A stretch of 64,000 nt of DNA from Ylistrum balloti. Its lineage: Eukaryota. The translations under genes were made by a program, and so were the position numbers. The DNA lies in contig NW_026782196.1 of the NCBI RefSeq assembly GCF_031769215.1, positions 682,001 through 746,000 of the forward strand, in the 5' to 3' direction. The notes under the pieces were generated by a model. It searched no databases. It worked only from the letters and a program-made list of their open reading frames with translations, and was not told where the DNA came from. Positions 4,425-29,954 of this stretch are shown piece after piece (positions within the stretch are counted from its first letter, which is position 1; each line of letters begins with the position of its first letter).

Positions 4425-7229
4425 TCACTCGCTGACGTGTTGAAAGGCCCTTTCTACACAATCAGTTCCAAAGAAAGCCTCGAGTACATTGACCACCACC
4501 AGTTTGGCCGAACTGGCAAAGTTCTCGTGATTCTGTGACGCAAACTTGACCATCGAGTCAAGCCGGAAATCCACAAAAGTTAGGTTCTGATGCTCGAACT
4601 TGTCCTTGGGTCCACTGGTGAAGCGTGCCTTAATGTTTTCTGCACTGAGGCGGTGTTGTTCAGCTATCCTTTCATCAAGAAGATCAACAAAGCCACACAG
4701 GCCCCACTCGTGGTAGTCAAACTTTAGATATACTGTTGTCAGAGAAATGGCGTCCAGATCACTTCCGGTAAGCACTATTCCAATTTCCTCTTTCAAACCT
4801 CTTGCTGCTGTATTCACCAGATCGACGTAATGTTGACTGTTACGTAAACATTTGTCAGGAGATGACACGCTTTCCACTATCCCGCACGTGAACAAGCCCG
4901 GACTTGACATTGCCGATTTCCTCGACCTTTGGGTGAAGACAAATTTCTGAGGACACTCAGGTCCCTCATTGGTCAGAACAGCGACATGGAGACCGAATGA
5001 ATTGCTGTAAAAAGAACTGACTACACCCTTGCAGGGAACGGCCTCATCCTTTTCTCTATCGGAGAAGGACATCCATATGTCTCGCATTGTTCTGTGGTGA
5101 CAGTAAAGAGACTCCTGGAAGTGAAGGTTTATTGTTTGACATTCATTAATACCAGATCGAGAAAATGTCACCTTCTTCAGGGCAGCTAACACATTGTTGT
5201 CTATATCCTTCTTAGCTGCTAATTTTCTGTATTTTTCAGCGGTGCGTATGTACAGGTCTCTCTTTTCCATGTTCCATGAATCAGGTGCACCGGCTTCCGG
5301 TATATCACTAGTTTCTATTTCACATATCAACTGTGTATGATCATATCCTGCATTGCGAATCCCTGTGTTATAAAAGCCGCCTGGCTCAGAGCAGAACGAA
5401 TCAGCAACATAAATGTGTGTGTTTTTAAGGAATCCGAAAGAAAAATACTCAGCAATGGTAGGGTTATTTTCGTAAGGGTTGCTCTTGAACAGAAAATAAT
5501 CAGAATAAAGTTCTTCTGTTGTTGGCCTGTGGGACGGACAATGCTTCAAACATGATTCGATGACATCAAGAAGAGGACCACTTAAATCCTCAGGTATGGA
5601 TACAAAATCCCCAATGAATTGTTCGGAAGTGTCAAGTTTCTTCTTGAGATTAGCACTGTAGCTATACTCCTTTACTTTATCTTTCGATACTGACATATAG
5701 TTTTCGTCCTTGACCTGTCCGTCTTTCGTTTCATCATTCTCTATTCTCCCACCTTTCCGTACTACAGACATCAGTTGTCCAGTTGAAAGTTGATTAATCG
5801 CTTTTACTCCAGAGATTGCGTAGCCGGTAACCAACCCAAACGAGTAAATATCGCCGCGTTTGTAATCCTGAAGACTGAATGTAATGTCAGCTTTGCCCCT
5901 GAACACGAATTCAGGTGCTCCCCATCGCACATGTACGTATCCGCGCCGAGGTCCTTCTTGTAGGCCATAGTTACAGAAAGGACTTGCTGTTAGCTTTTCT
6001 ATACCACTACCCCAAGCAAGACCAAAATCGGCAACCTTGACCCTTAGTCTTGAAGGCCAAACCTCGACAAGGATGTTGTCGGGTTTTAGGTCTCTATGTG
6101 TGACATCGTTAGAATGTAGATAGGCAATTGCATGGAAAATTTGATTTGAAATATCCCAGGCATTGGCATAGCTGATCGGTCTCGTGCGCAAATACCCTAT
6201 CAGATTCATATCTACGTATTCCATAACAACGAACACTGCTATTCCGTGGCTGGTCAACTCTTGATGACGTACTTCCTTCGACTTTGGGCATAACACAGTG
6301 CGTGTTAAGCACGTTTGTACTTGTCCTGTTATCTCTTTGCGATCGGACGAGGTTGAGGACTGGTATATCCCAAAATGTCCTGTTTGTAGCTGTTCAACTG
6401 TGTGGTAATTTGAACTTATATGTTTCTTGACTTCTTGATGTGAATTTGTAGGATCTTTTTGAACATCAGTTGGTGCATTACCAGATGTTTGTGTATTTGG
6501 GATTAGTTTGTTTGGACTCTGTATTGAAGCTTCGTCAATATAACCTCTCGGATCAGAATTCCACGAGTCTCCCACATTGCACGGACTATTATCAGACATT
6601 GAGAAAGATTCTTTTGAATACAGTCCAGTGCCAGTCGCTACATCACTGTTGGAGAACGTCGAGTGCTCCGATGTTGAAACGCTTTTTGGATTAGTCACGA
6701 ATACGTCACTGTCGATATTTGACTGTGGCAAAATGTGGCCGGATGTAGAAGACACATTTTGTCCAGAACCTAAATCAATATTTGCCGAACTATCAACAAG
6801 TTGAATAACGTCATGATCCGACACCAACCCCATCCCTCGAAAGGCTACTATATTGTCATGGTGAAGCTCTCGGAGCAGATGACATTCTAAGAAGGATGAA
6901 CTGGCGCGGTCCTTTAATATTTTCACTGCAACGCGTGCTCCTTGAAGACGGCATTCATATACTTTTCCAAAGTTTCCTTCTCCTTTCAGTATCCAGTCAG
7001 AAAGCTGATGAGGACCAACTAAAGATGGTATTCTTGGTTTCGGAATGAGTTTTAGCAGTAAGAATAATTCATGAATTCGCGACTGCAACTCGCCTAAAAT
7101 AACCCCGCCATTAGACAGACTGATGGAGAAATTATCGTTCAAGGGACATAACTCTTCCAGGCTATCAAAAACGTCCCGAAGTCTGTGTAAACTGGCACGT
7201 ACACGGTTTTCTTGCTCCACCAGATCCAT
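4425..7229 (-). CDS. Intronless protein kinase - atypical Nudix (NUDT22-like) fusion protein, paralog A, 934 aa
   Basis: Single 934-aa ORF from ATG. Kinase motifs: GEGNFGKV, VAVK, HRDLKPDN, DFG, RWGAPE, DIYSFG. C-terminal domain: SNSFGLHVAVLT...FVFTQRSR...CGIVES...AARGLKEEIGI (Nudix-box-like). Collinear with the ORF at 13310-15466. Confidence 0.9.
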   Translation of the reverse strand: MDLVEQENRVRASLHRLRDVFDSLEELCPLNDNFSISLSNGGVILGELQSRIHELFLLLKLIPKPRIPSLVGPHQLSDWILKGEGNFGKVYECRLQGARVAVKILKDRASSSFLECHLLRELHHDNIVAFRGMGLVSDHDVIQLVDSSANIDLGSGQNVSSTSGHILPQSNIDSDVFVTNPKSVSTSEHSTFSNSDVATGTGLYSKESFSMSDNSPCNVGDSWNSDPRGYIDEASIQSPNKLIPNTQTSGNAPTDVQKDPTNSHQEVKKHISSNYHTVEQLQTGHFGIYQSSTSSDRKEITGQVQTCLTRTVLCPKSKEVRHQELTSHGIAVFVVMEYVDMNLIGYLRTRPISYANAWDISNQIFHAIAYLHSNDVTHRDLKPDNILVEVWPSRLRVKVADFGLAWGSGIEKLTASPFCNYGLQEGPRRGYVHVRWGAPEFVFRGKADITFSLQDYKRGDIYSFGLVTGYAISGVKAINQLSTGQLMSVVRKGGRIENDETKDGQVKDENYMSVSKDKVKEYSYSANLKKKLDTSEQFIGDFVSIPEDLSGPLLDVIESCLKHCPSHRPTTEELYSDYFLFKSNPYENNPTIAEYFSFGFLKNTHIYVADSFCSEPGGFYNTGIRNAGYDHTQLICEIETSDIPEAGAPDSWNMEKRDLYIRTAEKYRKLAAKKDIDNNVLAALKKVTFSRSGINECQTINLHFQESLYCHHRTMRDIWMSFSDREKDEAVPCKGVVSSFYSNSFGLHVAVLTNEGPECPQKFVFTQRSRKSAMSSPGLFTCGIVESVSSPDKCLRNSQHYVDLVNTAARGLKEEIGIVLTGSDLDAISLTTVYLKFDYHEWGLCGFVDLLDERIAEQHRLSAENIKARFTSGPKDKFEHQNLTFVDFRLDSMVKFASQNHENFASSAKLVVVNVLEAFFGTDCVERAFQHVSE

Positions 7230-13309: not shown

Positions 13310-15466
13310 CTATAAATCTTGGTTAAACTTTTGGTGTACTTTATCACTCCCAAAGAACGTCTCCAATACCTTGACCACCACTAGTTTGGCAGAACTAGCA
13401 AAGTTCTCATGATTATTTGACACAAATTCAACCATAGGCTCCAACTCAAAGTCCACAAAAGTCAGTGTCTGATGCTCGAACTTGTCCTTAGGTCCACTGG
13501 TAAAGCGCCCCTTGATGCTTTCTGCACTGAGGCGATGCTCCTCTGCTATCCGCTCATCCTTCAGGTCAACAAAACCACACAGACCCCACTCATGGAAATC
13601 AAACTTGAGGTATATGGTCATCAAGCAAATGGCATCCAGATCATTCCCTGTCAATTCCAGACCAATTTCCTCCATTAATCCTCGAGCCGCTGTGTTGAGT
13701 AGATTGACATATGTTTCACCTTCAATATTAACATAGTCAGGTTTGGAGACACTTTCTACAGCCCCACATGTAAAGTTACCTGGGCTTGACATGCCTTTTC
13801 TTCTAGCTCTTTGGGGAAATACAAATTTCTGTGGCTTATCTGGACCCTCATTGGTTAGAATAGCAACATGGAGCCCAAATGAATTGCTGAAGTATGGATG
13901 GACATCTCCTTTGCATGGAACTTCCTGATTCTTTTCTGAAGGAGAAAGTGACATCCAAATTTCTCGCATGCTGCGATGATGGCAATAGTCAGACTCCTTG
14001 AAATTGAGAGCAATGGTTTGTTTTTCATCTTCTCCAGGTCTTGCTAACACCAAGCCTTTCAGTGCTGATGTTGGATTGTTGTCTATCTCTCTGCTCTTGG
14101 CCATCTGTAGATATTTTTGTAGACAATCCTGGTACTGTGCTATCTCCTCTTCTGTCCACTGGATATGTGGGTCTCGATACGGTGCACCCTCTGTTTCTAT
14201 CTTACATATCAGATTGTTGTGGTCATATCCTGTTGGTCTTTTTCTGTTGGGTGATTCTAAGTACCCAAGTGTTGCATCATCTTCCCCTATATAGGAATCT
14301 GCCACAAATATATCTGTTTTCTCCATGAATCCACACGAGAAAAATTCCACTTGTGTGGGGTCAATCTGGTATGGATTTTTATCCACTGAGAAATATTCTG
14401 CCAATAGATGTCTAGCACTTTTCCTTGCTTCTGGATCATGTTGAACACATGTTTCTATAGCAGCTCGTAGAGTCCCTTCCAAAGATTTTGGTAACTTCAC
14501 AGGGTCATCGTCTGATTCATCAGATTCTGATGAAAGACATGATGATGATATGTTGGCCAAAGCTTTCACTCCAGTGAGTGTGTAAGTCATCACCAGTCCA
14601 AATGAATACATATCTCCTTGTTTGTAATCTGTGATATCATATTCCTTTTCCCCATATCTGGCAAACTCTGGGGCTCCCCATCGGATGTTTAAGTAGTACG
14701 AACTCATCCCTCGTGTTGTTGATCCTGAAGGTCTGACATATTCTGTTTCATTTGCTTCCCCCTGACTGTACCATGCAAGTCCAAAGTCTGCTACTTTCAC
14801 CAAGATTCGGCTAGGCCCCACTTCTATGAGAATGTTGTCTGGCTTCAGATCTCTGTGAACCACATCCAGAGAGTGGAGGTAGGATAATGCGCTGCATATC
14901 TGCTTTCCGACACTCCAAGTCTGACTCTCTGTTAGTCCATGTCTTTCATGTGTTTCCAAATCCCTGATGTACTGGAACAAGTTCTTGGACATGAACTCCA
15001 TTACAAGAAACATATGTTGATCTTCGTCTATCACGGAGTTTTCAGATCGTGAAATCTGGCCTAGTTCCTTTCCAGTCATATAACCCATCCCGCGATATGC
15101 CACGATGTTATCGTGACTCAAGTAACGAAGTAAGTCTGACTCCCTGAACTTAGTCTTAGCTTGTTCTTTCAGTGTTTTAACAGCCACTCTAGATCCATTC
15201 AGTTTACACTCAAAGACCATTCCAAAATGACCCTCACCGAGGAATTTTTTATCGGTCAAACTCCTTGATGTGACGCAGGCGATGGATGAAGATTTATTTG
15301 CTAGTTGAAGCAAATCTTTCACGTGGTCGTAAACTGTACTTACGGCTATTCTTACTTCTTTTACTGTTGTTTCCAGATTTTCACTTATTCCTGAAAACTT
15401 ATTCACAAGTTCATTAATCGATCGAAAACATTCTTTAAGTTGTTCTGATCGAGTGTCTGGATCCAT
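13310..15466 (-). CDS. Intronless protein kinase - atypical Nudix (NUDT22-like) fusion protein, paralog B, 718 aa from the ATG
   Basis: The ORF-track start at 15481 is a TTG; the first ATG is at 15466 (MDPDTRSEQL...). Kinase motifs: GEGHFGMV, VAVK, HRDLKPDN, DFG, RWGAPE, DMYSFG. C-terminal domain: SNSFGLHVAILT...FVFPQRAR...CGAVES...AARGLMEEIGL...DKFEHQTLTFVDF. Confidence 0.9.
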   Translation of the reverse strand: MDPDTRSEQLKECFRSINELVNKFSGISENLETTVKEVRIAVSTVYDHVKDLLQLANKSSSIACVTSRSLTDKKFLGEGHFGMVFECKLNGSRVAVKTLKEQAKTKFRESDLLRYLSHDNIVAYRGMGYMTGKELGQISRSENSVIDEDQHMFLVMEFMSKNLFQYIRDLETHERHGLTESQTWSVGKQICSALSYLHSLDVVHRDLKPDNILIEVGPSRILVKVADFGLAWYSQGEANETEYVRPSGSTTRGMSSYYLNIRWGAPEFARYGEKEYDITDYKQGDMYSFGLVMTYTLTGVKALANISSSCLSSESDESDDDPVKLPKSLEGTLRAAIETCVQHDPEARKSARHLLAEYFSVDKNPYQIDPTQVEFFSCGFMEKTDIFVADSYIGEDDATLGYLESPNRKRPTGYDHNNLICKIETEGAPYRDPHIQWTEEEIAQYQDCLQKYLQMAKSREIDNNPTSALKGLVLARPGEDEKQTIALNFKESDYCHHRSMREIWMSLSPSEKNQEVPCKGDVHPYFSNSFGLHVAILTNEGPDKPQKFVFPQRARRKGMSSPGNFTCGAVESVSKPDYVNIEGETYVNLLNTAARGLMEEIGLELTGNDLDAICLMTIYLKFDFHEWGLCGFVDLKDERIAEEHRLSAESIKGRFTSGPKDKFEHQTLTFVDFELEPMVEFVSNNHENFASSAKLVVVKVLETFFGSDKVHQKFNQDL

Positions 15467-15635
15467 GACGATCAAATTCAATTTACTCTCAAAACGAAAG
15501 TAGAAAATTCGGAACGCTTCTATATCGCGATCTTACAGTTCGGAACATATCGGATGCTTTGATAATAGTCGTATATTTTTTGACAGCTTCAGTTCAATCT
15601 GAGGTCAAGGTTAATGCACTTGCACTCGTGTTAGC
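15467..15635. promoter_or_regulatory. Bidirectional promoter shared by kinase-Nudix paralog B (-) and GBE1 (+)
   Basis: Only 169 bp separate the two divergent ATGs, and the interval is CpG-rich relative to the window. It contains an IRF-element-like AAAACGAAAGT at about 15491-15501. Confidence 0.7.
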
Positions 15636-18600
15636 ATGGCCGGTGATGGACGTAATACTTGTGATGTTCCTGAGATCGAAAAACTGTTTGACATCGATCC
15701 AAACCTGAGAAATGTCGAACAAGAAATCAGGAGAAGGTATTATTATGACGATGATTTTGATAGCTTTCAAATAGCACGTGTTAAATGAGTGACAGCGGCA
15801 TTCAGTAGCTAATTGCTTTGCACGTGTGCCGTAAGTGCATGAGGCATGTATGAGGTTATGTCGGTCTATCCACTTTGGCATGTATAAAAAAATTCAAGAA
15901 ATGATAATACAACTGCACTGCATTGAAAATATATGTTGATATATATTCATTATTATTGTAACAAACTCCTGTTGTCTCTCACTCTGAGAATATGTTGTGT
16001 GTCGAGGAAAATTTCAAATTGACATTTCTGAATAATCAGCAATTAACCCTAGTGATTAATATTGTTGATTAAATCATCCTCTTTATATAGATACATGTTC
16101 TTATACATACATATTTCCATTGCATGTTTAGTCCAGTATCCTATCACATCACTTTGGAATGACATACAATTAACCTAAGTTGGAGTTATCTGATTTTGTT
16201 CCGGATTCACTTCTTTTGAAGCTTGAGCATGGAAGGTCATTGGTTTATGTTGAAGGCCAGGAGTTTACCTTTGAATAGGTAACTGGGGTGTGAACAGGGA
16301 GGCTGGGAAAAGCAGGACACAGCAATTGCTGACTGTCAATTATATACATGTAGATTTGATAATGGTTTTTAGCTGTTACATTATGATGTATTTTATAAAA
16401 TTATTTTGACCTCTGGCCACAGTTTGTCTGTGTGACACAGTTTTTCCATGTGACACAGTTTGTCTGTGTGACACTGTTTGTCCATGTGACACAGTTTGTC
16501 CATGTGACACTGTTTGTCCATGTGACACTGTTTGTCTGTGTGACACAATTTGTCCATGTAACACTGTTCGTCTGTTTGTCCTTGTTACACTGTTTGTCCA
16601 TGTTACACTGTTTGACTGTGTGACACTGTTTGTTCATGTGACACAGTGTGTCCATGTGACACCGTCTGTGTGACACAATTTGTCCTTGTAACCCTGTTCG
16701 TCCGTTTGTCCTTGTTACACTGTTTGTCCATGTTACACTGTTTGTCTATGTGACACTGTTTGTCCATGTAACACTGTTCGTCCGTTTGTCCTTGTTACAC
16801 TGTTTGTCCATGTTACAATGTTTGACTGTGTGACACTGTTTGTCCATGTGATGCAATTTGTCCTGTGGACACTGTTTGTCCATGTGACACTGGTTGTCCG
16901 TTTGTCCATGTGACACTGTTTGTCCTTGTGACACAGTTTGTCAGTGTGACACTGTTTGTCCTTGTGACACAGTTTGTCAGTGTGACACTGTTTGTCCTTG
17001 TGACACAGTTTGTCAGTGTGACACTGTTTGTCCTTGTGACACAGTTTGTCAGTGTGACACTGTTTGTCCTTGTGACACAGTTTGTCAGTGAGACACTGTT
17101 TGTCCATGTGACACTGTCCTTGTGACACAGTTTGTCAGTGTGACACTGTTTGTCCTTGTGACACAGTTTGTCAGTGTGACACTGTCCTTGTGACACAGTT
17201 TGTCAGTGTGACACTGTTTGTCCTTGTGACACAGTTTGTCAGTGTGACACTGTTTGTCCTTGTGACACAGTTTGTCAGTGTGACACTGTTTGTCCTTGTG
17301 ACACAGTTTGTCAGTGTGACACTGTTTGTCCTTGTGACACAGTTTGTCAGTGTGACACTGTTTGTCCTTGTGACACAGTTTGTCAGTGTGACACTGTCAG
17401 TGTGACACTGTCCTTGTGACATTGTTAGTCTGTGTGACAGGATTTGTCCATGTGACACTGTCCTTGTGACACAGTTTGTCAGTGTGACACAGTTTGTCAG
17501 TGTGACACTGTCCTTGTGACACAGTTTGTCAGTGTGACACTGTTTGTCCTTGTGACACAGTTTGTCCATGTGACACAGTTTGTCCATGTGACACTGTTTG
17601 TCCTTGTGACACAGTTTGTCAGTGTGACACTGTTTGTCCTTGTGACACAGTTTGTCAGTGTGACACTGTTTGTCCTTGTGACACAGTTTGTCAGTGTGAC
17701 ACTGTTTGTCCTTGTGACACAGTTTGTCAGTGTGACACTGTTTGTCCTTGTGACACAGTTTGTCAGTGTGACACTGTTTGTCCTTGTGACACAGTTTGTC
17801 AGTGTGACACTGTTTGTCCTTGTGACACAGTTTGTCAGTGTGACACTGTTTGTCCTTGTGACACAGTTTGTCAGTGTGACACTGTTTGTCCTTGTGACAC
17901 AGTTTGTCAGTGTGACACTGTTTGTCCTTGTGACACAGTTTGTCAGTGTGACACTGTTTGTCCTTGTGACACAGTTTGTCAGTGTGACACTGTTTGTCCT
18001 TGTGACACAGTTTGTCAGTGTGACACTGTTTGTCCTTGTGACACAGTTTGTCAGTGTGACACTGTTTGTCCTTGTGACACAGTTTGTCAGTGTGACACTG
18101 TTTGTCCTTGTGACACAGTTTGTCAGTGTGACACAGTTTGTCAGTGTGACACTGTCCTTGTGACACAGTTTGTCAGTGTGACACTGTTTGTCCTTGTGAC
18201 ACAGTTTGTCAGTGTGACACTGTTTGTCCTTGTGACACAGTTTGTCAGTGTGACACTGTTTGTCCTTGTGACACAGTTTGTCAGTGTGACACTGTTTGCC
18301 CTTGTGACACAGTTTGTCAGTGTGACACTGTTTGTCCTTGTGACACAGTTTGTCAGTGTGACACTGCTAGGTTTTATTAAAGAGGCTTATAATTGCCTCT
18401 TTCTGCTTTGCAACATTGTTAAGTATAAAACAAGTATGAGAGTTTAGTTCTGGAAGTTTGGTTTGTAGCTATGTTGGATTGTGATGTAAGAGAGGGTTTT
18501 TATCCTCTATTGGTGAGAGTGATGGTGCCTGCTGCTCATATGAACAGTTACATAGGATTCTTAATACAGCAGTCAAAAACTAAGGATTGGTGTTGAATTT

Positions 18601-21600
18601 TATTTCTTGATGACTCATTCTAACATTATCTAAACACAGGTGTAGTGACAGGTGTCTGATGGTAACTTGGAAGATAAGGTGTAGTGACAGGTGTCTGATG
18701 GTAACTTGGAAGATAGGGTATAATGACAGTTGTCTGATGGTAACTTGGAAGATAGGGTGTAGTGACAGGTGTCTGATGGTGACTAGAAAGATACCTACCA
18801 AAGAACTTCTTAATATATGCTTAATAAGGAGATTTTATGTTACATCAGTGGTGTTTTTTTATGGTTATTAGGCATGCATAATTATAAAAGATATACTTCA
18901 GCATGATAGTATACAATAGTGTACAGTAATGAAAGCCTATACTATATATAGACTTCCTTTCCATGATGATGAAGTTTAATAGACACACATTTCAGCCCCA
19001 ACTCGCTTTAAAATCATGTTATTATTATTTTTAAGGTATGGATGCTTCCAGAAAATTATCAATGATATCAGCCAGTCTGAAGGAAGCTTGGAGAAATTTT
19101 CTCTGGGTTATGAGATTTTCGGAATTCACAGAACGGCAGACAATGGGATTAACATGACAGAATGGGCACCAGGAGCAGAGGGCATCTACCTAAGAGGAGA
19201 CTTCAGTCAGTAACTTAAACAATTATTAGTTTAAATTTTGTTTATAAAAGGCAGAGAAATAATTGTTACCTGTGATTTTAGGGTTTGTTGCTAAAAGTTG
19301 TAAGGTTCACTGGAAAAGTCTGTTTGATTACATTTATTTGTATAATATTTGAAATATTCAATTTTGATGTTGTGTCTGAATTTGTTTCCATGAAATGAAA
19401 TGGGGCATTTGTGGCCCAAAATCTTAACCTAAAAACTACATAGTATCGAAAGTATTTTGTATTTCTTCAATTAAGGTTAAGCATATGGCAGCTATTAGAC
19501 GAAACATATTCAAACTCAGATTTTTGTTGTAAGAATGAGTCTGTTTTAGATGACTGGAACCAGACGGAGTATCCATTTACCAAAGGAGAATTTGGAAAAT
19601 GGCATTTAACACTGCCCCCTAAACCTGATGGCTCATGTCCAATACCCCACAACAGTAAAATCAAGGTAATTAAACTTTTGTAATATAGATAGACAAAATT
19701 CAAGACAAGAAGTTTGAAAGTCCAACATCATAAGGTGTAGACACTTCATTAAGATTTTATTTTCTGTGACCTGACAACCATCCATCATTTTTTTCTTTTT
19801 ATGGAAACTGTGGATCAATCTTTCACAAATTTTGTTGTTTGTCCTTTGTCAAAATTATTAAAAGAAATAGTATATTTGTATGTTCAACAAAACATCATTT
19901 TTGATTTGGTTTCTTAAACGGTTTGCAGTGTTCAACAGTTAGAAGAATTTGTTGTTTTGACAAGTAAATATATAAAATATAAACTTTATTTATTCTAAAA
20001 ATAATTGTGAAACAAGCTATTAGCTTATATTAAATCACTCATGTCAGCCCAGATGGAAGCATAAGGGGGTCTTACTATTGGAGAAAACCACAGTACCAGG
20101 GGAATACCTGTGTGATTTGGCAGGTGACCTTTTCAAATACATTTGGGGAATAAAACCTGAGATGGCTAGGTAAAAGGTGAATGTGTTACACACTGAATCA
20201 CACGACCAACTAGCGGCCTGGTAAAATGTGGTCAACTGGACTAGTAATAGAAAATGTATGCATAGAGGACTCCTATGTAGTGTATCAGACTTTAATTCAG
20301 CCAAGTTCAGTTGTGAATATATTGTCCATACGCATTGGACATTTTGCGAAAGCTGTTACCAACAGTCAGTTTACTTAATGTTAGCACCTTCAGTCTATCA
20401 TACCTATTTACATTAATTCCTAGCTAAACAGTAAACCAGTTATAAAGGATTTCCAGTGATAGAGCTAATGTAAAAACATGGCAGAGAGGGTTATATTTTG
20501 GGACAAATTAGGGGATATTTTAATTAAACAAAAAACACACATAACATATAGAAATACTTGCTAAATATCAATTTAATTACTGTTTTCTTTCAAATCGGAT
20601 GTCTCATGACCACGGTCTTTGTTTTTCTTTAGTTGTTTGATAAAAAGAAATTTTATTTTTGGCTGAGCCATTGTCATTAGGGAAACTTGGACGTCCCCAT
20701 TTCACTAAGAGATAACCTGTAACACTGAAATGCTGTTACAGTACCACAGTATGCAATCATAGTTAAAGAAACGCTTTTTCCATCTTAGTTTTTACAAACT
20801 TACAAGTTGACATTTTGTTGTTTTACACAACAATGTCACACAAAAGGAATGCATAATAACCAATTGATAGCTAGACAGTTGACATCAGAGGTACATGAAA
20901 TTACATGAAAAGGTATACTTGTTATATGTATTAGTTGCCAGTGAAAGATAACTTATCTGTTGGCAAATTCTACTCATCAGGATGAGTGCTTTTGCCAGGT
21001 CTTGCTTTACTTTTCAAATTTCTCGGAAGTTATGGAGGACCTTTCCAAAAAAAAATTCTAGGTATGTCTTAGGTGCCTTATTAGAAATGAAGTTTCACAC
21101 CTTTATATTTGATAATGATTGTAGGAACTAGATAACTAACACAGGGACCATCTTGGATTTAGATTTTTAAACTAAGGAAAGAATCATCACAAAACATTAT
21201 AGACAAGTAAAGGATTCCCAATGGTTCCTGCTACTGTTTGAACTTCGTTAATTATCACAAACTACCAAAAATTACCATTTGGAATTTAGGAAAATTCTTT
21301 ACATATCAGAAATCTAGATTAAAACCTTCATACTAAGAAGGTACCATTATAAATGTCAGGAAAGGAAAAATTCAGGAGAAAGAAAAGAAAGTATGACTTT
21401 TATTTAGAACAGAAATTAGATCTTAAGTGTTAGGTGTCCTAATTCCTTATAGGCTGGTTTCATTCTACTCTAACTTTCTGTTCTACTCTACACTATAAAA
21501 CTGTTGTGTAAATTTTTGTTGACAGCTAGTGATTCGTACCAAGTCTGGAGAACTTGTGGACCGCCTTAGTCCATGGGCCAACTATGTTGTGAGACAGGAA

Positions 21601-24600
21601 AAGGTTCCTGTGTATGACCAAGCGTTTTGGGACCCTCCGCAAGTATGTATGGGTACAGTCTTACTGGACCAATATTCTTTTACCTCCTCCGTTCATAGAA
21701 ATCTTCTGCTAGTGATACTTCACCAGTTAGTCCCTCGCTTTGTCTAGAAGTGTAGAATACTGAAATCAGGTCTTGTGACCTACCATACACAGATTTATAA
21801 TCTCTTGTCCTTTGTTATTTCAAAATTTTTCCAAGATTTTCCATATACTTCTCACAATACACACCTGTACTTTTACAATAACAGACTAACACAAATTCTC
21901 TGCTAAAACAATACTCATTTTTATTGTTACAATTACAGCCTTACACTTTCAAGAATCCTCATCCCATGAGGCCTGACAGCTTACGGATATATGAATGCCA
22001 TGTAGGGATATCTTCATGGGAAGGCAAGATATCAACATATAAAGAATTCTCTCGAGACGTTATACCACGTATTAAGAATTTAGGCAAGTACAGCTCTTCA
22101 GATGTTATAAATAGTTATGATACAAACCCAGACAGTGGTATGTCGGCACAAAAGTATTATATTTTTTATTATATTGTAAATGTTTCCATGTTCTATGATG
22201 CTGTGATACATATAAAAATGTTATCATTTTTTACAGGTTATAATGCTATCCAGCTGATGGCTGTGATGGAACATGCTTATTATGCTAGTTTTGGATATCA
22301 AGTCACAAGTTTTTTCGCTGCATCCAGGTATGATATCATTTCCTTCTTAGACTAGTTAGGTTTGTTTCTATGGTTTGTCACCCCTTTGGGACCTCTAAGT
22401 AGTTGTTGGTGGCTTTGTCACGAAACACCAATGGGAGGCCCACCATATTCCACCCAGAGCAATAGGGGTCAAATGTTTTGGCCAAGGACACAACCATGAT
22501 AGTATAGATCTGTTTGATTCTTAGCCTCCTGAATAACAAACCGTCACATGTAGGGGGTACCAAACTACACACCTTGGAACTTCACCTGAGGTTGTTAATA
22601 TTCAACGGAATGAGATATTGCATCATTGTAAGCATTGTGATTTTATTCAGCACTGGATCCTCATTGTAAATTTATTCAACACTAGTCCCTCATTGTGATT
22701 TTATTCAGCACTTGTCCCTCATTGTGATATTATTCAGCGTTGGTCCCTCATTGTGATTTTATTCAGCACTTGTCCCTCATTGTGATATTATTCAGCATTG
22801 GTCCCTCATTGTGATTTTATTTAGCACTTGTCCCTCATTGTGATATTATTCAGCACTGGTCCCTCATTGTGATTTTATTTAGCATTGATCCCTCATTGTG
22901 ATATTATTCAGCATTGGTCCCTCATTGTGATTTTATTTAGCACTTGTCCCTCATTGTGATATTATTCAGCACTGGTCCCTCATTGTGATATTATTCAGCA
23001 TAGGTCCCTCATTTTGATTTTATTCAGCATTGGTCCCTCATTGTAAATTTATTCAACACTAGTCTCTCATTGTGATATTATTCAGCACTGGTCCCTCATT
23101 GTGATATTATTCAGCACTGGTCCCTTGTGATTTTATTCAGCACTAGTCCCTTGTGATTTTATTTAATGGTTCTCCTAAAGTACATGTGGTATGAACTCTG
23201 TAAACCTCACATTGATTGTATCTTTCCAATGAGTGCACAGTCAGCAAATTACTGGACAAGTTGAGACTGAACTGATTAAAGAATTAAAAAGGACGATTCT
23301 GCTACATAGACAATAACATCAAAAGGATGGTTATGGTGTTGCTGAAAATTCGACATCATATTGATGAATCTGTGATGCCGTAATGTAGATTCAACATGCC
23401 TTAAATTTTCATGACCAAAGCTGCTGTGTTTGACTTAGAACCTTGTGTTCTAACAAAATTTTCCATTACCCCCTGTTTGATGTTTCTCCATGGGATGAGA
23501 TTTATTGATTTAAGATAGGTTTATAACAGCTTTTGTACGTTTTATTAACATTTTGTTTGAAATTCTGTTAAAATTCAAGGATAACATATCAATGTCATGG
23601 ATTTTTTTTCTCATACGTTTTATTGACAAAGACAAAGACATATAAAGCCATACAAACATGGATGTCCTGTCATCCCATACACATCATCACATATCACTAT
23701 CATTGATAAATATCTTTTTATACAAAATGAACTTTCTGTATCAGTATAGTCTAAACTGTAAAAAGGTAGACCTCTTGAAACTTACCATCTTTAATAATTT
23801 CTCTTATACTTGGTTCTCTCTAGTCGGTTTGGTACACCTGATGAACTGAAGGAGTTGATTGACACAGCTCATGGAGCTGGATTGGTGGTACTGTTAGATG
23901 TTGTACACAGTCATGCCTCCAAGAATGTCGTAGATGGTCTGAACCAGTTTGATGGCACGACCTCCTGCTACTTTCATGATGGACCAAGAGGAACACATGA
24001 GCTGTGGGACTCTCGTCTGTTTAATTACACTGGGTAAAGTACTGTTCCTACTACAGTATGTATCCTGCAATAAGCCCAGCCTCACAAAAAGCTACTCCAC
24101 TGCCATGTAACAAGCCTGTTTTTGTCTTTTAGTGACAGGTCATGTGTCAGCCCTGGGCTGATAGTCAGATAACCACATTAAGCTTAATATCTTGGTAAAA
24201 GTGATGTCAACAATTTCATTTTAAATGCATTTTCTGTTGCGAAAATTTTAATATGCCAAAAAATGTTTTGAGAACACGCAAAGGACACGTTTATTTTTTG
24301 TTTTATGTGTGAATTTATTATGAGCCAATTTCAGCATTTGATAAATATAAATGGTTCAGTCTATGTAGCATTGAAAGAAAATGGAAATTTAGGGGGTCAG
24401 TTCCATTTTTGTGTGAACAGTGACCTTTTAACCCCCGATATGCAATAGTTTATTCTGTGGCTTTAATAAGGTGTTTTAGCAAGCATGCCGACATATCATC
24501 CTGATTCCTCAATGGCTTATGGTTTGATTTACAGGTGGGAGGTGTTGAGGTTCTTGTTGTCCAATCTTCGCTGGTGGATACAGGAATATCAGTTTGATGG

Positions 24601-27600
24601 ATATCGCTTTGATGGCGTCACATCAATGTTGTATCACTCCCATGGAATGGGTAAAAATTTCCAGCTTATTTACATAGAGTAACATCCTAACTTATCACAC
24701 CTAACACAGGTTTTCTTTCTTTTTTTTTGTAAGTTTTGACTTAAAGTCTTGTGATTGTTCTGTCTAGATAAAATGAAGTGTAGTTCAAAAAGTGTGAAAA
24801 ACTTTTAATTTACCAGTTTTGTTGGTTTACTGTGGAATATCTACCTGTGAATCGGTGTAAAAGTATTTTCTAAAGAAAATTTAGCTACTGCTATTAAATC
24901 TGTTTACATTTGTGTTTTAAACTTGTTGAATTAAAGATCAAAATCTGTAAATAACAGCATTGAAATATTTTTTCTTTAGGCCATGGATTTAGTGGAGATT
25001 ATAACGAATATTTTGGGCTAAACACTGACACAGATTCACTGGTGTATTTGATGCTTGGCAACCACATGTTACATTCTCTGTACCCTGACTTCATTATTAC
25101 TGTCGCGGAGGTAAGTTGAAAAATTAAAAAAAAAAAAAAAAAAAAAAAATTGGTATTTCTGAGGCATCACATATGAATGAATGTTAAATTTGGTAGGTTG
25201 TTCTTTCTTCCTTAAAATGATTTCTTTCTACCAAAAGGTTTTGGTATGTTTGGTAGCTCAACTGATCTTCTTAAATCCCAAATGCCCAGGGTCATGATAT
25301 TTGGTCAGTATGTAGCATTCTGGCATAGATTGCATAGATTGGTTTCAAGTTTATGCAAATGAATGTCCTTGACCTATTTTTAAGGTTACTGGGGTCAAGT
25401 GCATTTAAATATTTTAAAGACTCCTTGTTTGCTGTTGGAGGTCATACTTCGAAGTAATTGTTTCTCTCATGTTAAAGGATGTGTCTGGAATGCCGGGACT
25501 CTGTCGACCAGTGCAGGAAGGTGGGGGAGGTTTTGACTACAGGCTAGCTATGGCTGTACCTGATTTATGGATCAAGGTAAAATGTTGGGATTTGAAATTA
25601 AAATAGGTAACCAGTAGGTTTTTCTGTCAGATGCTTGATTTTGATTTTATGATTAACCCCCAACTTTCATTGTCAGTTCTGACAGTCTTGACACACATCA
25701 TCATGGTCAACGTGTGGAAAGTTGCTTACCTGGAAATCAGTTTTTATGAATATGCCTTGTGAAAACAAGCCTATTTTCTGATCAGCAGCACATGGTTTGA
25801 CCAAGGGTCTATACTGGGTGGCTAAATTTACTCTTAGGGAAAATTTGAAGAAAAAAAAAATAAAAGAAAAATCATTAGTTATCGTTTCACTTTAAATACT
25901 TTGTCCTTATATTTGATGATGCTTGATTAATACTGTTAAAGAAACAAGATACAAACAAATGTATACTAAAGACTTGTACTCTCTATCCTTATTGTAGTTT
26001 TTGAAGCACAAAAGTGACGATGAGTGGGACATTGGCCAAATGTGTCATAACCTTACAAATCGTCGCTACGGGGAGAAGTGTATTGCATATGCTGAGAGTC
26101 ATGACCAGGCATTAGTCGGTGATAAGACTGTTGCATTCTGGCTGATGGACAAGGAAATGTATACCAATATGTCTAACCTGTCACCACCAAGTCTCGTGAT
26201 TGACAGGGGAATTGCACTTCATAAAATGATTCGTCTTCTGACATGTGGCCTGGGAGGAGAGAGCTATCTTAACTTTATAGGTGAGAGTTCGCAGAGGGTG
26301 ATGTCAAATTTCATAAACATAAATGGGTATTTATTGTAGGTGAGGAACAAATAATAGGGAGCTTCATTCTTTAAGGGAATAGTTTGTGGAGCAGGACTCC
26401 AGAACTACATACCAAGAGTTCGGTGAATTATTATAGCAGGGACGATGTTGAAAGAGGAAGTAACGTAGACTTTCAGTGTGATCTTTTTGACCTTCATAGC
26501 CATATTTAAAAAAGGAAAGAAAATTGATATTGAACATTGACATATCAAGGATAATGAAAATCATCTGCATTACATAAGACTCCGAACCATACAATGTAAG
26601 ACATGTGACAGATACAAAAGCTTTTTCAATCAGGTAATGAGTTTGGACACCCAGAATGGTTGGACTTCCCTCGAGTGGGTAACAATGAGAGTTTTCACTA
26701 TTGTCGGCGACAGTGGCAGCTGGTGGATGACAAGAACCTCAAATACCAGTACCTCAACAACTTTGATCGTGCCATGATGCAAGTAGAGGAGACCTATAAG
26801 TGGCTGAGTAACTCACAGGTATCTATATAAATGTGGTTGAGTAACACAAAGGTATCTTTTGTATTCATTAATTAATGTAGTAATATGAACATAATTCTGA
26901 CTTGTTGAAATATCTATATATAGGGTGTCATTACTTGTTAGATATTTCATTGTTAATGGCTAGAAAAACATGTGTTGTATTGTCTCACTTTTCATTCTTC
27001 CACAGAACTATGTAAGCAGAAAACATGAGGGAGATAAAGTGATCGTGTTTGACAGAGCAGATCGTCTTGTGTTTGTGTTTAACTTCCATCCCACCAAAAG
27101 TTACACAGATTATAAAATTGGTGTGCAGAACCATGGAAAGTATCCTTTTTTTCAAAAGTGGGCATGCAACTGAAGATTATAAGAATCAAATATCACATTT
27201 TGATGGTAAAATTGAAGGTGGATGCCTAACTTAGAAAACTTTTCCCAAAGGTTAATCTAGTTTAGTTTATTGTTACTTTACATTCTATTGATAAGCAGGG
27301 TCATTTAAGGGTGTGTAAGGTTTGGATGGTGGAGGAAAGCCAGATTTCCGAGAGAAAAACCACTGTCCTGCGGCCAATACCTGGTGATTGCCCCACATAA
27401 GCCTCAAACCCATGACCAAGAGGTGAAGGGTCAAAAAGGTTAAGACTTTGCTTTGTATATCGTTCAACAGTGATTGATTATTTTTTAAACTAAATGTAAT
27501 TGTGCCATCTTTCATAACAGTGTTAAGCATACATATGATCTCTATGAGACAGGCAAGTATTATACTATAGAATTATCAAAACTTACAGGCTAGGTGTCCC

Positions 27601-29954
27601 TGGTTTGAAGTTAATTCACTTAGAGGGGACAATATGGTGGACACATAGGAGTATTGGATCATTAATATTTATTTTTTTTAGTGATCAATTTTTAAAAAAG
27701 TGTCAACAAGTTGTAACCAGCGTTGTAAAGACTTCAGAAATCTTTTAAAATAATCTATAGTTAGCAACATCAGAAGATATGATTATAATACGTTTGAACA
27801 TTGTACTAAATAAAGTTAGTGACATCAAAAGCCATTTGCTCAATATGATAGTAGTACATCATTGTACTAAGTTTCTGCTCTAGCGAAATTGACAGCTTTG
27901 TAAAGTTTGGGTTTGACGACATTTCATACAAATAGCATGGATGTATCTTCAGATACTGTTGCTTAAAGTACTCAAAGAAATTAGTAACATCAAGATATAT
28001 ATTATTGATATGATCATAAAACATCTGTGTACATAGTTTCCCATGTTGATGTTGATTGTGTACATCATGATCCTTAAAGATCGAAATTGATGACATTATC
28101 GCACTGTTATAATGTGACTTTATTACAAATTATGATATGTTTAGAATAAAAAACATAGCAGACTGACTTTTCAGAAGTAAGAGATGAATCTTTCCCTTTA
28201 ATAGTAATGCACCTGTTAAAATGTCTTACTCTGTATCTCAGGGAGATACAGGAGAACTTCACATGGGATTTGATATTTGCAAATCAGTATGAAACACTGA
28301 AATATGTACGGCACAGAAATCATCTATACCTCTATATTTAGTAGATTGATAACGTATAAATAAATCAATAACAATATTTAGAGGTCAGAATGTCTACAAT
28401 CACACGCAGCATTGAAAATTACATCAAAAACATTCTCTAGGTAAAAGAGGAGATATTAAATTATTTTTAAATCTTTTTGCACATTCATGGAAATTGAGTA
28501 TCAAAGTAATACATTTGAAAACTTAAGGATCAGGAATCTCCTTACATTTTGTTTGACTGTAGATAGTTAGCTCTCCTTGACTACCCCAAGATACAAACTT
28601 GTGCTTGACTCGGATGCTGAGGAGTTTGGAGGACACAAGCGTTTAGACCACAGTGTTGAGTATAGGACCTCACAAGAACCCTGGGATGACAGACAATGTT
28701 CTATGATGGTGAGTTGATCAGGAGGCTTCACCTGTTAAAATGATCATCACATAGTATTACTTAAAAAACATCAGTCTGTTGACTTTCCTTGTACAATGTA
28801 TAGCCAGTGGAGCATGGAATATGATTGAAAATTAAAAAAAAGTATCAGTAGTATATTCATTCAGCAGAAAGTCTGTGACAACAAGTCTGCTCATCAGTAT
28901 TTATTGCTGTTCAGTGCTCCTTCATTGTCCAATAATTAACTCGCACCCTTACTTTGAGTCATACCCTGACTTTGAGTCATACCCTGACATTGCGTCATAC
29001 CCTGACTTTGAGTCATACCCTGACTTCAAGTCATACCCTGACTGTCATACCCTGACTTTGAGTCATACCCTGACGTTGAGTCATACCCTGACTTTGAGTC
29101 ATACCCTGACTTCGAGTCATACCCTGACTTTGTGTCATACCCTGACTTTGAGTCATACCCTGACTTCGAGTCATACCCTGACTTGGAGCTGACTTGGAGT
29201 CATACTCTGACTTGGAGCTGACTTGGAGTCATACCCTGACTTGGAGACATACCCTGACTTTGAGTCATACCCTGACTTCAAGTCATACCCTGACTGTCAT
29301 ACCCTGACTTTGAGTCATACCCCGAGTTCGAGTCATACCCTGACTTTGAGTCATACCCTGACTTTGAGTCATACCCTGACTTTGAGTCATACCCTGACTT
29401 CGAGTCATACTCTGACGTTGAGTCATACCCTGACTTTTGAGTCATACCCTGACTTCGAGTCTAATGGTTATGTGTTGGCCTATAGGCTTATTACAGAATA
29501 AATTCTGTAAATGTAAACATATTGTGAAATGTACATGTAGAATATAGATATTTGTTAAATTGAAAACTTCTGGTTTGTTTAGTGAAATTATGAATCGTTG
29601 ATTTTGGTGGGTATTTTATTTTCGTTTGTTTCATGGGTACTTGTAATCTACAAATTCATATGTCTATGAACAGTTAAAATTAGTACAAGCACATTTATTG
29701 GGGTTTATTTTCCATGAAATCAAATGTCCGTGAAAAAGTTATCTTTTAAAAACCATGAAAATTGATTACAAAGAAAATATCTTAATTTACAGTAACATGC
29801 TTTCAAGAAGTTGGTTCCATATAGCCAAAGATATGCTAGATACATTTACATACATTCAATGGATGGTTTTATTGGAAAATAAGATCTGACTGATTGTTTC
29901 TCACAGGTGTATTCTCCTAACAGGACAGCCATTGTACTGGCTAAGGTGGATTGA
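15636..29954 (+). CDS. GBE1: 1,4-alpha-glucan branching enzyme (glycogen branching enzyme), 15 coding exons, 687 aa
   Basis: Exons: 15636-15736, 19036-19205, 19550-19665, 21526-21642, 21939-22083, 22237-22327, 23824-24033, 24535-24650, 24980-25110, 25478-25576, 25998-26280, 26634-26818, 27006-27139, 28591-28708, 29907-29954. Total 2064 nt, in frame with consistent phases. GH13 motifs: [28 protein letters not shown] (nucleophile), VAEDVSG (acid/base), [21 protein letters not shown]. Confidence 0.97.
16420..18365. repeat. About 1.95-kb minisatellite in GBE1 intron 1; 36-bp unit made of two 18-bp subunits
   Basis: Unit tgtgacactgtttgtcct-tgtgacacagtttgtcag. Degenerate on the left, nearly homogeneous on the right. 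Confidence 0.97.
18635..18790. repeat. 39-bp tandem repeat x about 4 (GBE1 intron 1)
   Basis: Unit gtgtagtgacaggtgtctgatggtaacttggaagatagg. Confidence 0.9.
19980..20225 (-). mobile_element. tRNA-derived SINE, family A; further copies at about 36790-37000 (+), 40318-40500 (-) and 46650-46880 (-)
   Basis: Copies share a gggttttccc..ggtactccagtttcctcc-type core and a 3' tail ataagct...cttgttt...aaataaataaagttt. The 40318-40500 copy has a tRNA-like head with an A box (tggcgcagtgg) and a duplicated B box (gttcgattgcc). Confidence 0.75.
22640..23165. repeat. 29-bp minisatellite x about 18 (GBE1 intron 6)
   Basis: Unit gcactggtccctcattgtgat(a/t)ttattca. Confidence 0.95.
27140..28590 (+). other. 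U12-type (minor spliceosome) GT-AG intron of GBE1
   Basis: Donor GTATCCTTTT. Branch site TCCTTGAC at 28574-28581, with the branch A 10 nt from the AG. No polypyrimidine tract. The spliced frame gives [11 protein letters not shown]. Confidence 0.85.
27290..27450 (-). mobile_element. tRNA-derived SINE, family B; fuller copy at about 49570-49770 (-)
   Basis: Both copies share ggtggaggaaag...gaaaaaccac...gccagtacctgg..a.tgccccac.tag..ctcaaaccc.tgacc. The 49.7-kb copy has a tRNA-like head (tagccgagtggtttagacg). Confidence 0.7.
28950..29460. repeat. 18-bp minisatellite x about 28 (last GBE1 intron)
   Basis: Unit gagtcataccctgacttt. Confidence 0.95.

What the first reader, a model, noticed from the sequence alone, without database searches (positions are those of the whole stretch)
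15466..15736. Kinase-Nudix paralog B and glycogen branching enzyme are head-to-head, 169 bp apart: a possible UDP-glucose/glycogen module
Seen: GBE1 exon 1 ([33 protein letters not shown], 15636-15736; missed by the ORF track) starts 169 bp from the paralog B ATG, so they must share a promoter. Established: UDP-glucose is the donor for glycogen synthesis, NUDT22 hydrolyses UDP-glucose to UMP and glucose-1-phosphate, and glycogen is a major energy store in bivalves. Inference: coordinated expression could link a UDP-glucose sensing or hydrolysing kinase to glycogen metabolism. Alternatively, a retrogene may simply have borrowed the GBE1 promoter.
Basis: partly seen in the sequence, partly recalled or inferred. 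Interest (0 to 1): 0.7.

Follow-up and report, generated by a model that had tools for sequence, protein, structure and literature searches.

The report
Old divergent promoter: glycogen brancher and kinase
In this scallop the glycogen branching enzyme gene and a kinase gene with a NUDT22-like tail start 169 bases apart on opposite strands; the short spacer is conserved in four scallop genera and partly in a pearl oyster, so it is an old shared promoter region, but nothing yet ties the two gene products together.

Summary
The ATG of the single-exon kinase/NUDT22-like gene "B" is at 15466 (minus strand). The ATG of glycogen branching enzyme (GBE1) exon 1 is at 15636 (plus strand). The spacer between them is 169 bp.

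The pair is not restricted to one species. The same head-to-head layout, with spacers of 160-178 bp, occurs in Pecten maximus, Mizuhopecten yessoensis and Argopecten irradians. It also occurs in the pearl oyster Pinctada imbricata, with a spacer of about 500 bp.

It was absent within 10 kb of the homologues examined in Mytilus, Crassostrea, Saccostrea, Solemya, Haliotis and amphioxus.

The spacer is as conserved as coding sequence (79-87% identity), while the intron and the 3' flank sit at shuffle level. It is CpG-rich (observed/expected 1.65, against 0.41 for the window). It holds invariant blocks, one of which (GGTCAAGGTYA) is shared with Pinctada.

The C-terminal domain folds like human NUDT22 (Z 22) at only about 15% identity, so its substrate is unknown.

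No RNA data could be obtained. Shared transcription control and co-expression are therefore inferred, not shown.

The "UDP-glucose/glycogen module" idea remains speculation: GBE does not use UDP-glucose, and the linkage is missing in most lineages examined.

Best reading: an ordinary but anciently conserved bidirectional gene pair.

The parts
13310..15466 (-). Single-exon CDS of kinase/NUDT22-like gene, paralog B (718 aa plus stop)
   Evidence: ORF. Pkinase at aa 72-357, E 1e-39. 82-83% identical orthologues in three scallops. 4-fold sites are only 51-58% identical against 83% at the protein level, which indicates purifying selection.
14396..15253 (-). Protein kinase domain (aa 72-357)
   Evidence: Pfam match. 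VAVK lysine, HRDLKPDN and DFG are invariant or nearly so across 20 homologues. No subfamily can be assigned: GSK3b, Src, GCN2, PKR and TYK2 all score 57-61 bits.
13352..14347 (-). NUDT22-like two-lobed Nudix-fold domain (about aa 374-705)
   Evidence: AlphaFold model, pLDDT 85.6. Foldseek top hit is human NUDT22, E 1e-12. VIA-align Z 22.0, 271 residues, rmsd 3.6; the next Nudix scores Z 12.9. No Pfam or PDB profile hit.
15467..15635 (.). 169-bp spacer: candidate bidirectional promoter plus both 5' UTRs
   Evidence: 79-87% identical to three scallops, while the intron and 3' flank sit at shuffle level. CpG observed 10 against 6.1 expected. Alignments A1 and A4.
15489..15503 (-). Conserved block CTACTTTCGTTTTGA (plus strand TCAAAACGAAAGTAG), 23-37 nt upstream of the kinase ATG; Inr-like or IRF-like by eye only
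   Evidence: Nearly invariant in four scallops. Only close match in the 64-kb window. A related ACTTTCGGTTT lies upstream of the ATG in L011. The factor assignment is inference.
15508..15515 (-). GTTCCGAA, copy 1
   Evidence: Invariant in four scallops. The 8-mer occurs 4 times in the window against 0.85 expected, two of them in this spacer.
15539..15546 (-). GTTCCGAA, copy 2 (in Pecten and Mizuhopecten GTTCCGAAATAT; Pinctada has GATCCGAAATAT)
15578..15595 (+). Conserved TTTTGACAGCTTCAGTTC; its TCAGTT fits an initiator consensus, a possible GBE1 start site near 15591
   Evidence: TTTTGACAG and CAGT are invariant in four scallops. The start-site assignment is inference; no reads were available.
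15603..15613 (+). GGTCAAGGTTA, a direct repeat of nuclear-receptor-type half-sites, 22 nt upstream of the GBE1 ATG
   Evidence: Invariant in four scallops and GGTCAAGGTCA in Pinctada, always on the GBE sense strand 9-27 nt from the ATG. Unique in the 64-kb window. The factor identity is inference.
15636..15736 (+). GBE1 coding exon 1 (33 codons plus 2 nt)
   Evidence: The Pinctada exon 1 reads MADGDRN...EIRRR.
19036..19209 (+). GBE1 exon 2 (ends approximate)
19444..28714 (+). Remaining GBE1 exons, seen as open pieces and not joined
   Evidence: pieces. (CBM_48, Alpha-amylase, Alpha-amylase_C). (human GBE1 residues 447-541, E 4e-41).
4425..7229 (-). Paralog A (934 aa), tandem to B, with no GBE-type promoter blocks just upstream
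   Evidence: 47% identical to B. Sister to B in the tree, with a long branch. Its upstream 500 bp lacks the blocks.

Best explanation
The 169-bp spacer is a compact, CpG-rich, divergent promoter region. It serves GBE1 on the plus strand and the kinase/NUDT22-like gene B on the minus strand. The layout is old. It was present before the scallop genera split and most likely before scallops (Pectinida) and pearl oysters (Pterioida) split. It has been kept because the core and proximal elements and the short 5' UTRs of both genes are interleaved within about 170 bp, so any break would damage at least one gene. This is the usual behaviour of head-to-head pairs (PMC1487180). Shown: the geometry, the identity of both genes, conservation of the layout, and selection on the spacer. 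Inferred: the start sites (possibly near 15501 on the minus strand and 15591 on the plus strand), the sharing of factors, and any co-expression. No specific biochemical partnership between the two products is needed to explain the data.
For: Geometry is read directly. The same divergent pair has spacers of 161, 178 and 160 bp in Pecten maximus, Mizuhopecten yessoensis and Argopecten irradians. Pinctada imbricata also has the pair: GBE exon 1 at L012 8999-8895 and kinase homology from 9509. Spacer identity is 79-87%, equal to exon 1 (78-87%). The first 300 bp of intron 1 and the 3' flank score 62-72%, which is the shuffle level (67-71%), and 4-fold sites are 51-58% identical. Invariant blocks appear, and GGTCAAGGTYA and ATATTTCGGAWC are shared with Pinctada. 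CpG observed/expected is 1.65 against 0.41 for the window. The gene tree leaves the Pinctada GBE-linked copy in an unresolved three-way split with the scallop A+B clade and the mussel+oyster clade. A clade of Pinctada2 plus scallops is not rejected (delta lnL 0.71, AU p 0.26). In vertebrates, head-to-head pairs with start sites 1-400 bp apart are common and under selection against separation (PMC1487180).
Against: No RNA evidence was available. The only run holding this DNA is genomic: one contig crosses the ORF, the spacer and the intron at flat depth. Start sites, promoter sharing and co-expression are therefore untested. In Pinctada the spacer is about 500 bp and carries a palindromic insert. 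That kinase copy also has no ATG at the homologous start and sits on a long branch, so the pairing there may be decaying. All non-scallop, non-Pinctada homologues examined lack GBE within 10 kb. Selection against separation is therefore not absolute.
Confidence: 0.6

Rival explanations
1. Functional module. The kinase's NUDT22-like domain binds or hydrolyses UDP-glucose. The shared promoter co-expresses it with GBE1, so that nucleotide-sugar status and glycogen building are coupled.
For: The fold is NUDT22-like (Z 22). Human NUDT22 converts UDP-glucose to UMP and glucose-1-phosphate (PMC10101856 abstract). The linkage is conserved across two bivalve orders. The spacer is conserved. Head-to-head genes tend statistically to share function (PMC1487180).
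Against: Identity to NUDT22 is about 15%, with no sequence-profile match, so the substrate is unknown. In the Nudix helix the family has an invariant R-G-L-x-E-E rather than R-E-U-x-E-E. From general biochemistry, GBE does not use UDP-glucose; glycogen synthase does. The kinase/Nudix gene family is found from sponge and cnidarians to amphioxus, yet no GBE lies near the examined homologues of Mytilus, Crassostrea, Saccostrea, Solemya, Haliotis or amphioxus. Paralog A is not GBE-linked. A Branchiostoma belcheri homologue carries a Death domain, and the B. floridae neighbour is a Death+SH2 protein, which points to signalling rather than sugar metabolism. There are no expression data.
Confidence: 0.12
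2. Two independent promoters that merely abut. Each conserved block serves one gene only, expression is uncorrelated, and the linkage persists only because there is no room for a harmless break.
For: The blocks sort by side. GGTCAAGGTYA and the Inr-like TCAGTT lie next to the GBE ATG. CTACTTTCGTTTTGA lies next to the kinase ATG, and a related block sits upstream of the B-type gene in L011, where no GBE sequence is seen in the 173 nt available. In Pinctada an insertion of about 400 bp is tolerated between the two sides.
Against: The two central GTTCCGAA copies lie between the putative start sites and cannot be assigned to one gene. In vertebrates most head-to-head pairs show correlated expression (PMC1487180).
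Confidence: 0.23
3. Origin scenario, compatible with the best explanation. An intron-less retrocopy of the kinase/Nudix gene landed beside GBE1 and took over its upstream region. The later tandem duplication produced paralog A.
For: The CDS is a single exon in scallops, mussels and oysters, and in Pinctada and Solemya all but the first 21-44 residues lie in one exon. Haliotis and amphioxus show at least 8 coding exons. Scallop A and B are sister copies (SH-aLRT 99).
Against: Intron loss is shared by all bivalves sampled, including Solemya, where no GBE is nearby, so retroposition and the GBE linkage are not demonstrably one event. No poly(A) remnant or target-site duplication would survive at this age, and none was looked for. 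The ancestral location cannot be told from the unrooted, unresolved three-way split.
Confidence: 0.25

Closest known systems
Vertebrate head-to-head (bidirectional) gene pairs, as surveyed in PMC1487180
   Same: Divergent orientation. The 169-bp spacing between ATGs falls near the commonest class of start-site distance (101-200 bp). The spacer is CpG-rich and has no TATA box conserved across the scallops. The layout is conserved over long evolutionary distances.
   Different: This pair is in bivalve molluscs. The start sites are not mapped. The partner genes (GBE1 and a kinase/NUDT22-like fusion) have not, as far as my searches show, been described as a pair. The conserved blocks are not the GABP/NRF-1/Sp1 sites typical of mammals, as far as can be judged by eye.
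Human NUDT22 (UDP-glucose/galactose hydrolase; PDB 5lor, 5lf9)
   Same: The C-terminal 340 residues of gene B adopt the same two-lobed fold (Z 22, 271 of 290 residues, rmsd 3.6). Like NUDT22, it lacks a conventional Nudix box (PMC5688067; no Pfam NUDIX hit).
   Different: Only about 15% identity and no profile-level sequence match. The domain is fused to an apparently active protein kinase. Its activity and substrate are untested.
Human GBE1 (PDB 4bzy, 5clt)
   Same: Exon 2 and a catalytic exon match at E 1e-17 and 4e-41. The domain order CBM_48, Alpha-amylase, Alpha-amylase_C is the same (neighbour gene calls).
   Different: Nothing notable. It looks like an ordinary orthologue. Intron 1 carries an 18-bp minisatellite of about 110 copies.

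Membership tests
Bidirectional (head-to-head) gene pair | Two protein-coding genes on opposite strands with their 5' ends facing, less than 1 kb apart, and nothing between them | tested here: met
   ATGs at 15466 (minus) and 15636 (plus), 169 bp apart. No Rfam hit in the window.
Bidirectional (head-to-head) gene pair | Start sites of both genes mapped inside the spacer | not testable with these tools
The only run found is genomic DNA contigs.
Bidirectional (head-to-head) gene pair | Correlated expression of the two genes | not tested
   No RNA data were reachable, and no paper was found on this pair.
Bidirectional (head-to-head) gene pair | Layout conserved in other species | tested here: met
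   Three other scallop genera and Pinctada imbricata. Not seen next to the homologues examined in six other taxa.
Glycogen branching enzyme (GBE1) | CBM_48 plus alpha-amylase catalytic plus C-terminal beta domain, and orthology-level similarity to human GBE1 | tested here: met
   Tested exon by exon. The exons were not joined.
NUDT22-type Nudix hydrolase | Two-lobed NUDT22 fold | tested here: met
   Foldseek E 1e-12. Z 22 against 12.9 for the next Nudix.
NUDT22-type Nudix hydrolase | Sequence-level homology to NUDT22 or to the Nudix family | tested here: not met
   No Pfam NUDIX hit. No PDB hit with the single sequence or with an 18-sequence profile.
NUDT22-type Nudix hydrolase | Hydrolysis of UDP-glucose or UDP-galactose | not testable with these tools
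   Needs an enzyme assay. A residue-level comparison with the NUDT22 active site was not possible because no residue alignment or NUDT22 sequence reference was available.
Active eukaryotic protein kinase | VAIK lysine, HRD aspartate with the catalytic-loop asparagine, and DFG | tested here: met
   K97, H204/D206/N211 and D227-F228-G229 are invariant or nearly so in 20 homologues. Pkinase E 1e-39.
Retrogene | Intron-less coding region where outgroup orthologues have introns | tested here: met
   One coding exon in Mytilus and Crassostrea. In Solemya and Pinctada one exon holds all but the first 21-44 residues. At least 8 coding exons in Haliotis and amphioxus.
Retrogene | Poly(A) remnant, target-site duplications, or an intron-bearing parent gene in the same genome | not tested
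   Not expected to survive at this age. The rest of the genome was not available.

The most novel reading that the evidence does not exclude
The GBE1 / kinase-NUDT22-like pair is a co-regulated unit kept together since before scallops and pearl oysters split. In this reading the kinase's Nudix-like domain reads a nucleotide-sugar (or another nucleotide) signal and the kinase adjusts glycogen metabolism. The invariant GGTCAAGGTYA element would let a nuclear receptor of the energy-metabolism type drive both genes.
Probability: 0.1. Interest if true: 0.65.

Novelty: new member of a known kind. Interest (0 to 1): 0.3.

Why it matters
Glycogen is the main seasonal energy store and a quality trait in farmed bivalves. 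A mapped, deeply conserved 170-bp control region for the branching enzyme gene, with a handful of invariant blocks, is a ready target for reporter and association studies. The pairing also gives a first experimental handle on an uncharacterised animal gene family, a kinase fused to a NUDT22-like domain, found in animals from sponge to amphioxus. If expression of the pair proved tightly coupled, that would be the first functional clue for the family. If not, this is simply one more long-lived bidirectional pair.

Tried and rejected
**Exon 1 against solved structures.** There was no significant hit because 33 residues are too few. The exon was confirmed instead by scallop orthologues and by exon 2.

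**RNA evidence.** The single run listed is genomic DNA from another individual (21 differences in 3.6 kb), so it gives no start sites or splice reads. I kept the laid stretch clear of the 18-bp minisatellite.

**Sequence-level Nudix assignment.** Nothing was found; only the fold shows the relation.

**Kinase subfamily.** GSK3-beta tops the list at 61 bits, but Src, GCN2, PKR and TYK2 are within 4 bits. I reject any "glycogen synthase kinase" reading.

**My interim conclusion that the pair is scallop-only.** This was overturned by the second Pinctada copy.

**Promoter blocks upstream of paralog A.** They are absent. The GTTCCGAA at 9499 lies in unrelated sequence.

**Bacterial-type promoter and terminator scan.** Not meaningful for this genome.

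**Literature.** Nothing was found on this pair or on NUDT22-like kinases in invertebrates.

**Transcription-factor names for the blocks.** The labels (nuclear receptor half-sites, IRF/ISRE-like, ETS-like, Inr) are by eye only, as no motif library was available.


Full report
**1. The observation**

- A 718-codon ORF on the minus strand starts with ATG at 15466 and stops at 13310-13312.
- On the plus strand an ATG at 15636 opens a 33-codon frame, MAGDG...EIRR, that ends at 15736 before a GT.
- An in-frame TAA lies 24 nt upstream of that ATG, at 15612-15614.
- The two ATGs are separated by 169 bp (15467-15635).

**2. Identity of the plus-strand gene**

Exon 1 is too short for a significant database hit on its own. 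Three lines of evidence still place it in GBE1.
- It is 76-88% identical, codon for codon, to the first coding exon of the genes called as CBM_48 / Alpha-amylase / Alpha-amylase_C proteins (687 aa) in three other scallop genomes.
- Exon 2 (acceptor AG at 19034-35; about 19036-19209) matches human GBE1 residues 48-105 at E 1e-17. It continues the frame left open by exon 1.
- Further open pieces up to about 28714 carry CBM_48, the alpha-amylase catalytic domain and Alpha-amylase_C. One piece matches human GBE1 residues 447-541 at E 4e-41.

**3. Identity of the minus-strand gene**

- Residues 72-357 are a protein kinase domain (Pfam E 1e-39). The catalytic lysine, HRDLKPDN and DFG are conserved in 20 homologues.
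- No kinase subfamily can be named. GSK3-beta, Src, GCN2, PKR and TYK2 all score 57-61 bits. The GSK3 top hit should not be read as a glycogen link.
- The C-terminal 350 residues hit nothing by sequence.
- An AlphaFold model built on 18 homologues (pLDDT 85.6) matches human NUDT22 over both lobes. Foldseek gives E 1e-12. VIA-align gives Z 22.0, 271 of 290 residues, rmsd 3.6, about 15% identity. The next Nudix protein scores Z 12.9.
- The Nudix helix is recognisable as an invariant R-G-L-x-E-E-x-G, not the canonical R-E-U-x-E-E. Human NUDT22 is itself reported to lack a conventional Nudix box (PMC5688067).

The label "NUDT22-like" therefore holds at the level of fold. Nothing can be said about the substrate.

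**4. The gene family**

- Homologues occur in scallops (82-83% identity to Pecten, Mizuhopecten and Argopecten, so the window comes from a different pectinid). They also occur in mussels, oysters, Solemya, abalone, a chiton, amphioxus, a hemichordate, tunicates, cnidarians and a sponge.
- The coding region is essentially one exon in every bivalve checked. It has at least 8 coding exons in Haliotis and amphioxus.
- Paralog A (4425-7229, 934 aa, 47% identical to B) is the sister of B in the tree and sits on a long branch (SH-aLRT 99). The mussel duplicates arose independently.

**5. Conservation of the arrangement**

Species in which the pair is present:

| Species | Locus | Spacer |
|---|---|---|
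| Pecten maximus | L001 | 161 bp |
| Mizuhopecten yessoensis | L002 | 178 bp |
| Argopecten irradians | L003 | 160 bp |
| Pinctada imbricata, second copy P0049 | L012 | about 500 bp |

Homologues in Mytilus galloprovincialis, Crassostrea virginica, Solemya velum, Pinctada imbricata (copy 1), Haliotis, Branchiostoma floridae and Saccostrea cucullata have no GBE gene called within 10 kb. For all of these except Saccostrea, the window's GBE exons 1 and 2 also give no tblastn hit in the locus.

The second Pinctada copy overturned my interim view that the pair is scallop-only.
- It lies head-to-head with a 697-aa GBE gene.
- GBE exon 1 (MADGDRN...EIRRR) is at 8999-8895.
- Kinase homology begins at 9509, at the residue equivalent to position 4 of the scallop protein.
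- About 500 bp lie between, including a palindromic, MITE-like insert at 9413-9462.
- There is no ATG at the homologous start, and that copy sits on a long branch.

In the tree the Pinctada copy forms an unresolved three-way split with the scallop A+B clade and the mussel+oyster clade. A clade of Pinctada2 plus scallops is not rejected (delta lnL 0.71, AU p 0.26).

Pinctada (Pterioida) and scallops (Pectinida) are different orders of Pteriomorphia. From general knowledge, not tested here, their split lies hundreds of millions of years back.

The simplest reading is that the linkage existed in an early pteriomorph and was lost, or not sampled, in oysters and mussels.

**6. The spacer is under selection**

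Comparison of the window with the three scallops:

| Region | Identity |
|---|---|
| Spacer | 79-87% |
| GBE1 coding exon 1 | 78-87% |
| First 300 bp of intron 1, and 600 bp of 3' flank | 62-72% |
| Shuffled controls, same aligner | 67-71% |
| 4-fold degenerate sites of the kinase CDS | 51-58% |

CpG is enriched in the spacer: 10 observed against 6.1 expected, an observed/expected ratio of 1.65, against 0.41 for the window.

The alignment and the motif map show five blocks.
- 15489-15503: CTACTTTCGTTTTGA on the kinase strand. A related ACTTTCGGTTT lies upstream of the B-type gene of an unnamed species at 69% identity (L011).
- 15508-15515 and 15539-15546: two copies of GTTCCGAA. The 8-mer occurs 4 times in the window against 0.85 expected.
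- 15578-15595: TTTTGACAGCTTCAGTTC, whose TCAGTT fits an initiator.
- 15603-15613: GGTCAAGGTTA.

The last block is invariant in the four scallops and reads GGTCAAGGTCA in Pinctada. It always lies on the GBE sense strand, 9-27 nt before the ATG, and it is unique in the 64-kb window.

Pinctada also keeps GATCCGAAATAT, which matches the scallop GTTCCGAAATAT block.

By eye these resemble nuclear-receptor half-sites, ETS- or STAT-like sites, an IRF-like site and initiators. Those names are inference only.

**7. What could not be shown**

The one sequencing run that holds this DNA is genomic. A 3.7-kb contig crosses the ORF, the spacer and intron 1 at flat depth, with 21 single-base differences. Start sites, splice use and expression are therefore untested. 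"Shared promoter" is an inference from geometry and conservation. No paper on this pair was found.

**8. Interpretation**

The data fit an ordinary kind of object, a compact bidirectional promoter. Such pairs are common and are known to resist separation in vertebrates, and their most frequent start-site distance is 101-200 bp (PMC1487180). This instance is unusually old.

The specific "UDP-glucose / glycogen module" idea is not excluded, but it has little support.
- The substrate of the Nudix-like domain is unknown.
- GBE does not use UDP-glucose (general biochemistry).
- Most lineages examined that keep both genes do not keep the sampled homologue next to GBE.
- Paralog A works from a different upstream region.
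- Amphioxus relatives associate with Death domains, which hints at signalling or cell-death pathways instead.

The "retrogene borrowed the promoter" idea is plausible as an origin. Intron loss is shared by all the sampled bivalves, Solemya included, so it cannot be tied to the same event as the GBE linkage.

**9. Verdict**

This is a new, well-conserved member of a known kind of arrangement. Interest is moderate to low unless expression or enzymology later links the two products.

Noticed in passing
window 16418-18366 and 18638-18793: GBE1 intron 1 holds an 18-bp minisatellite of about 110 copies (consensus CACTGTTTGTCCGTGTGA, 78% matches) and a 39-bp repeat of 4 copies. These create the long artefactual ORFs on both strands at 16376-18447.
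   Followed up: partly
window about 54900-63250 (+): Open pieces look like exons of an oxysterol-binding-protein-related gene (for example ...ISHHPPVTAFHVTNRHDGFTISSSILTKSKFYG..., ...KKPYNPVIGESFRCYW...). Judged by eye only, not searched.
   Followed up: no
window 45340-45831 (+): Tandemly repeated ORF (about 24-aa units, ...VALFISSLCGLIYLQPVWPYLSPAC...) open in two frames. Probably a minisatellite and not a gene.
   Followed up: no
L012 9000-9560 (Pinctada imbricata): The GBE-linked kinase/Nudix copy has an intact frame of about 737 codons but no ATG at the homologous start (…GAT ATT TGG GAC ACG…). A palindromic, MITE-like insert lies at 9413-9462 just upstream. The public annotation starts it at an internal Met, which cuts off half the kinase N-lobe.
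   Followed up: partly
P0053 (Branchiostoma belcheri) and L010 898-5888 (B. floridae): One amphioxus homologue of the kinase/Nudix family carries a Death domain. The upstream neighbour of the B. floridae gene is a Death+SH2 protein. This is a possible hint of an immune or cell-death signalling role for the family.
   Followed up: no
L005 and L013: Independent tandem duplicates of the kinase/Nudix gene occur in Mytilus galloprovincialis (702 and 693 aa, 4 kb apart). Saccostrea cucullata has a second, fragmented copy at L013 18202-20407.
   Followed up: partly
window 13310-15466 compared with run X1: Another individual of the same species differs at 21 sites in 3.6 kb (about 0.6%). One of them lies inside the spacer (15546 C>T, in the second GTTCCGAA copy) and one just inside the kinase CDS (15415).
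   Followed up: no
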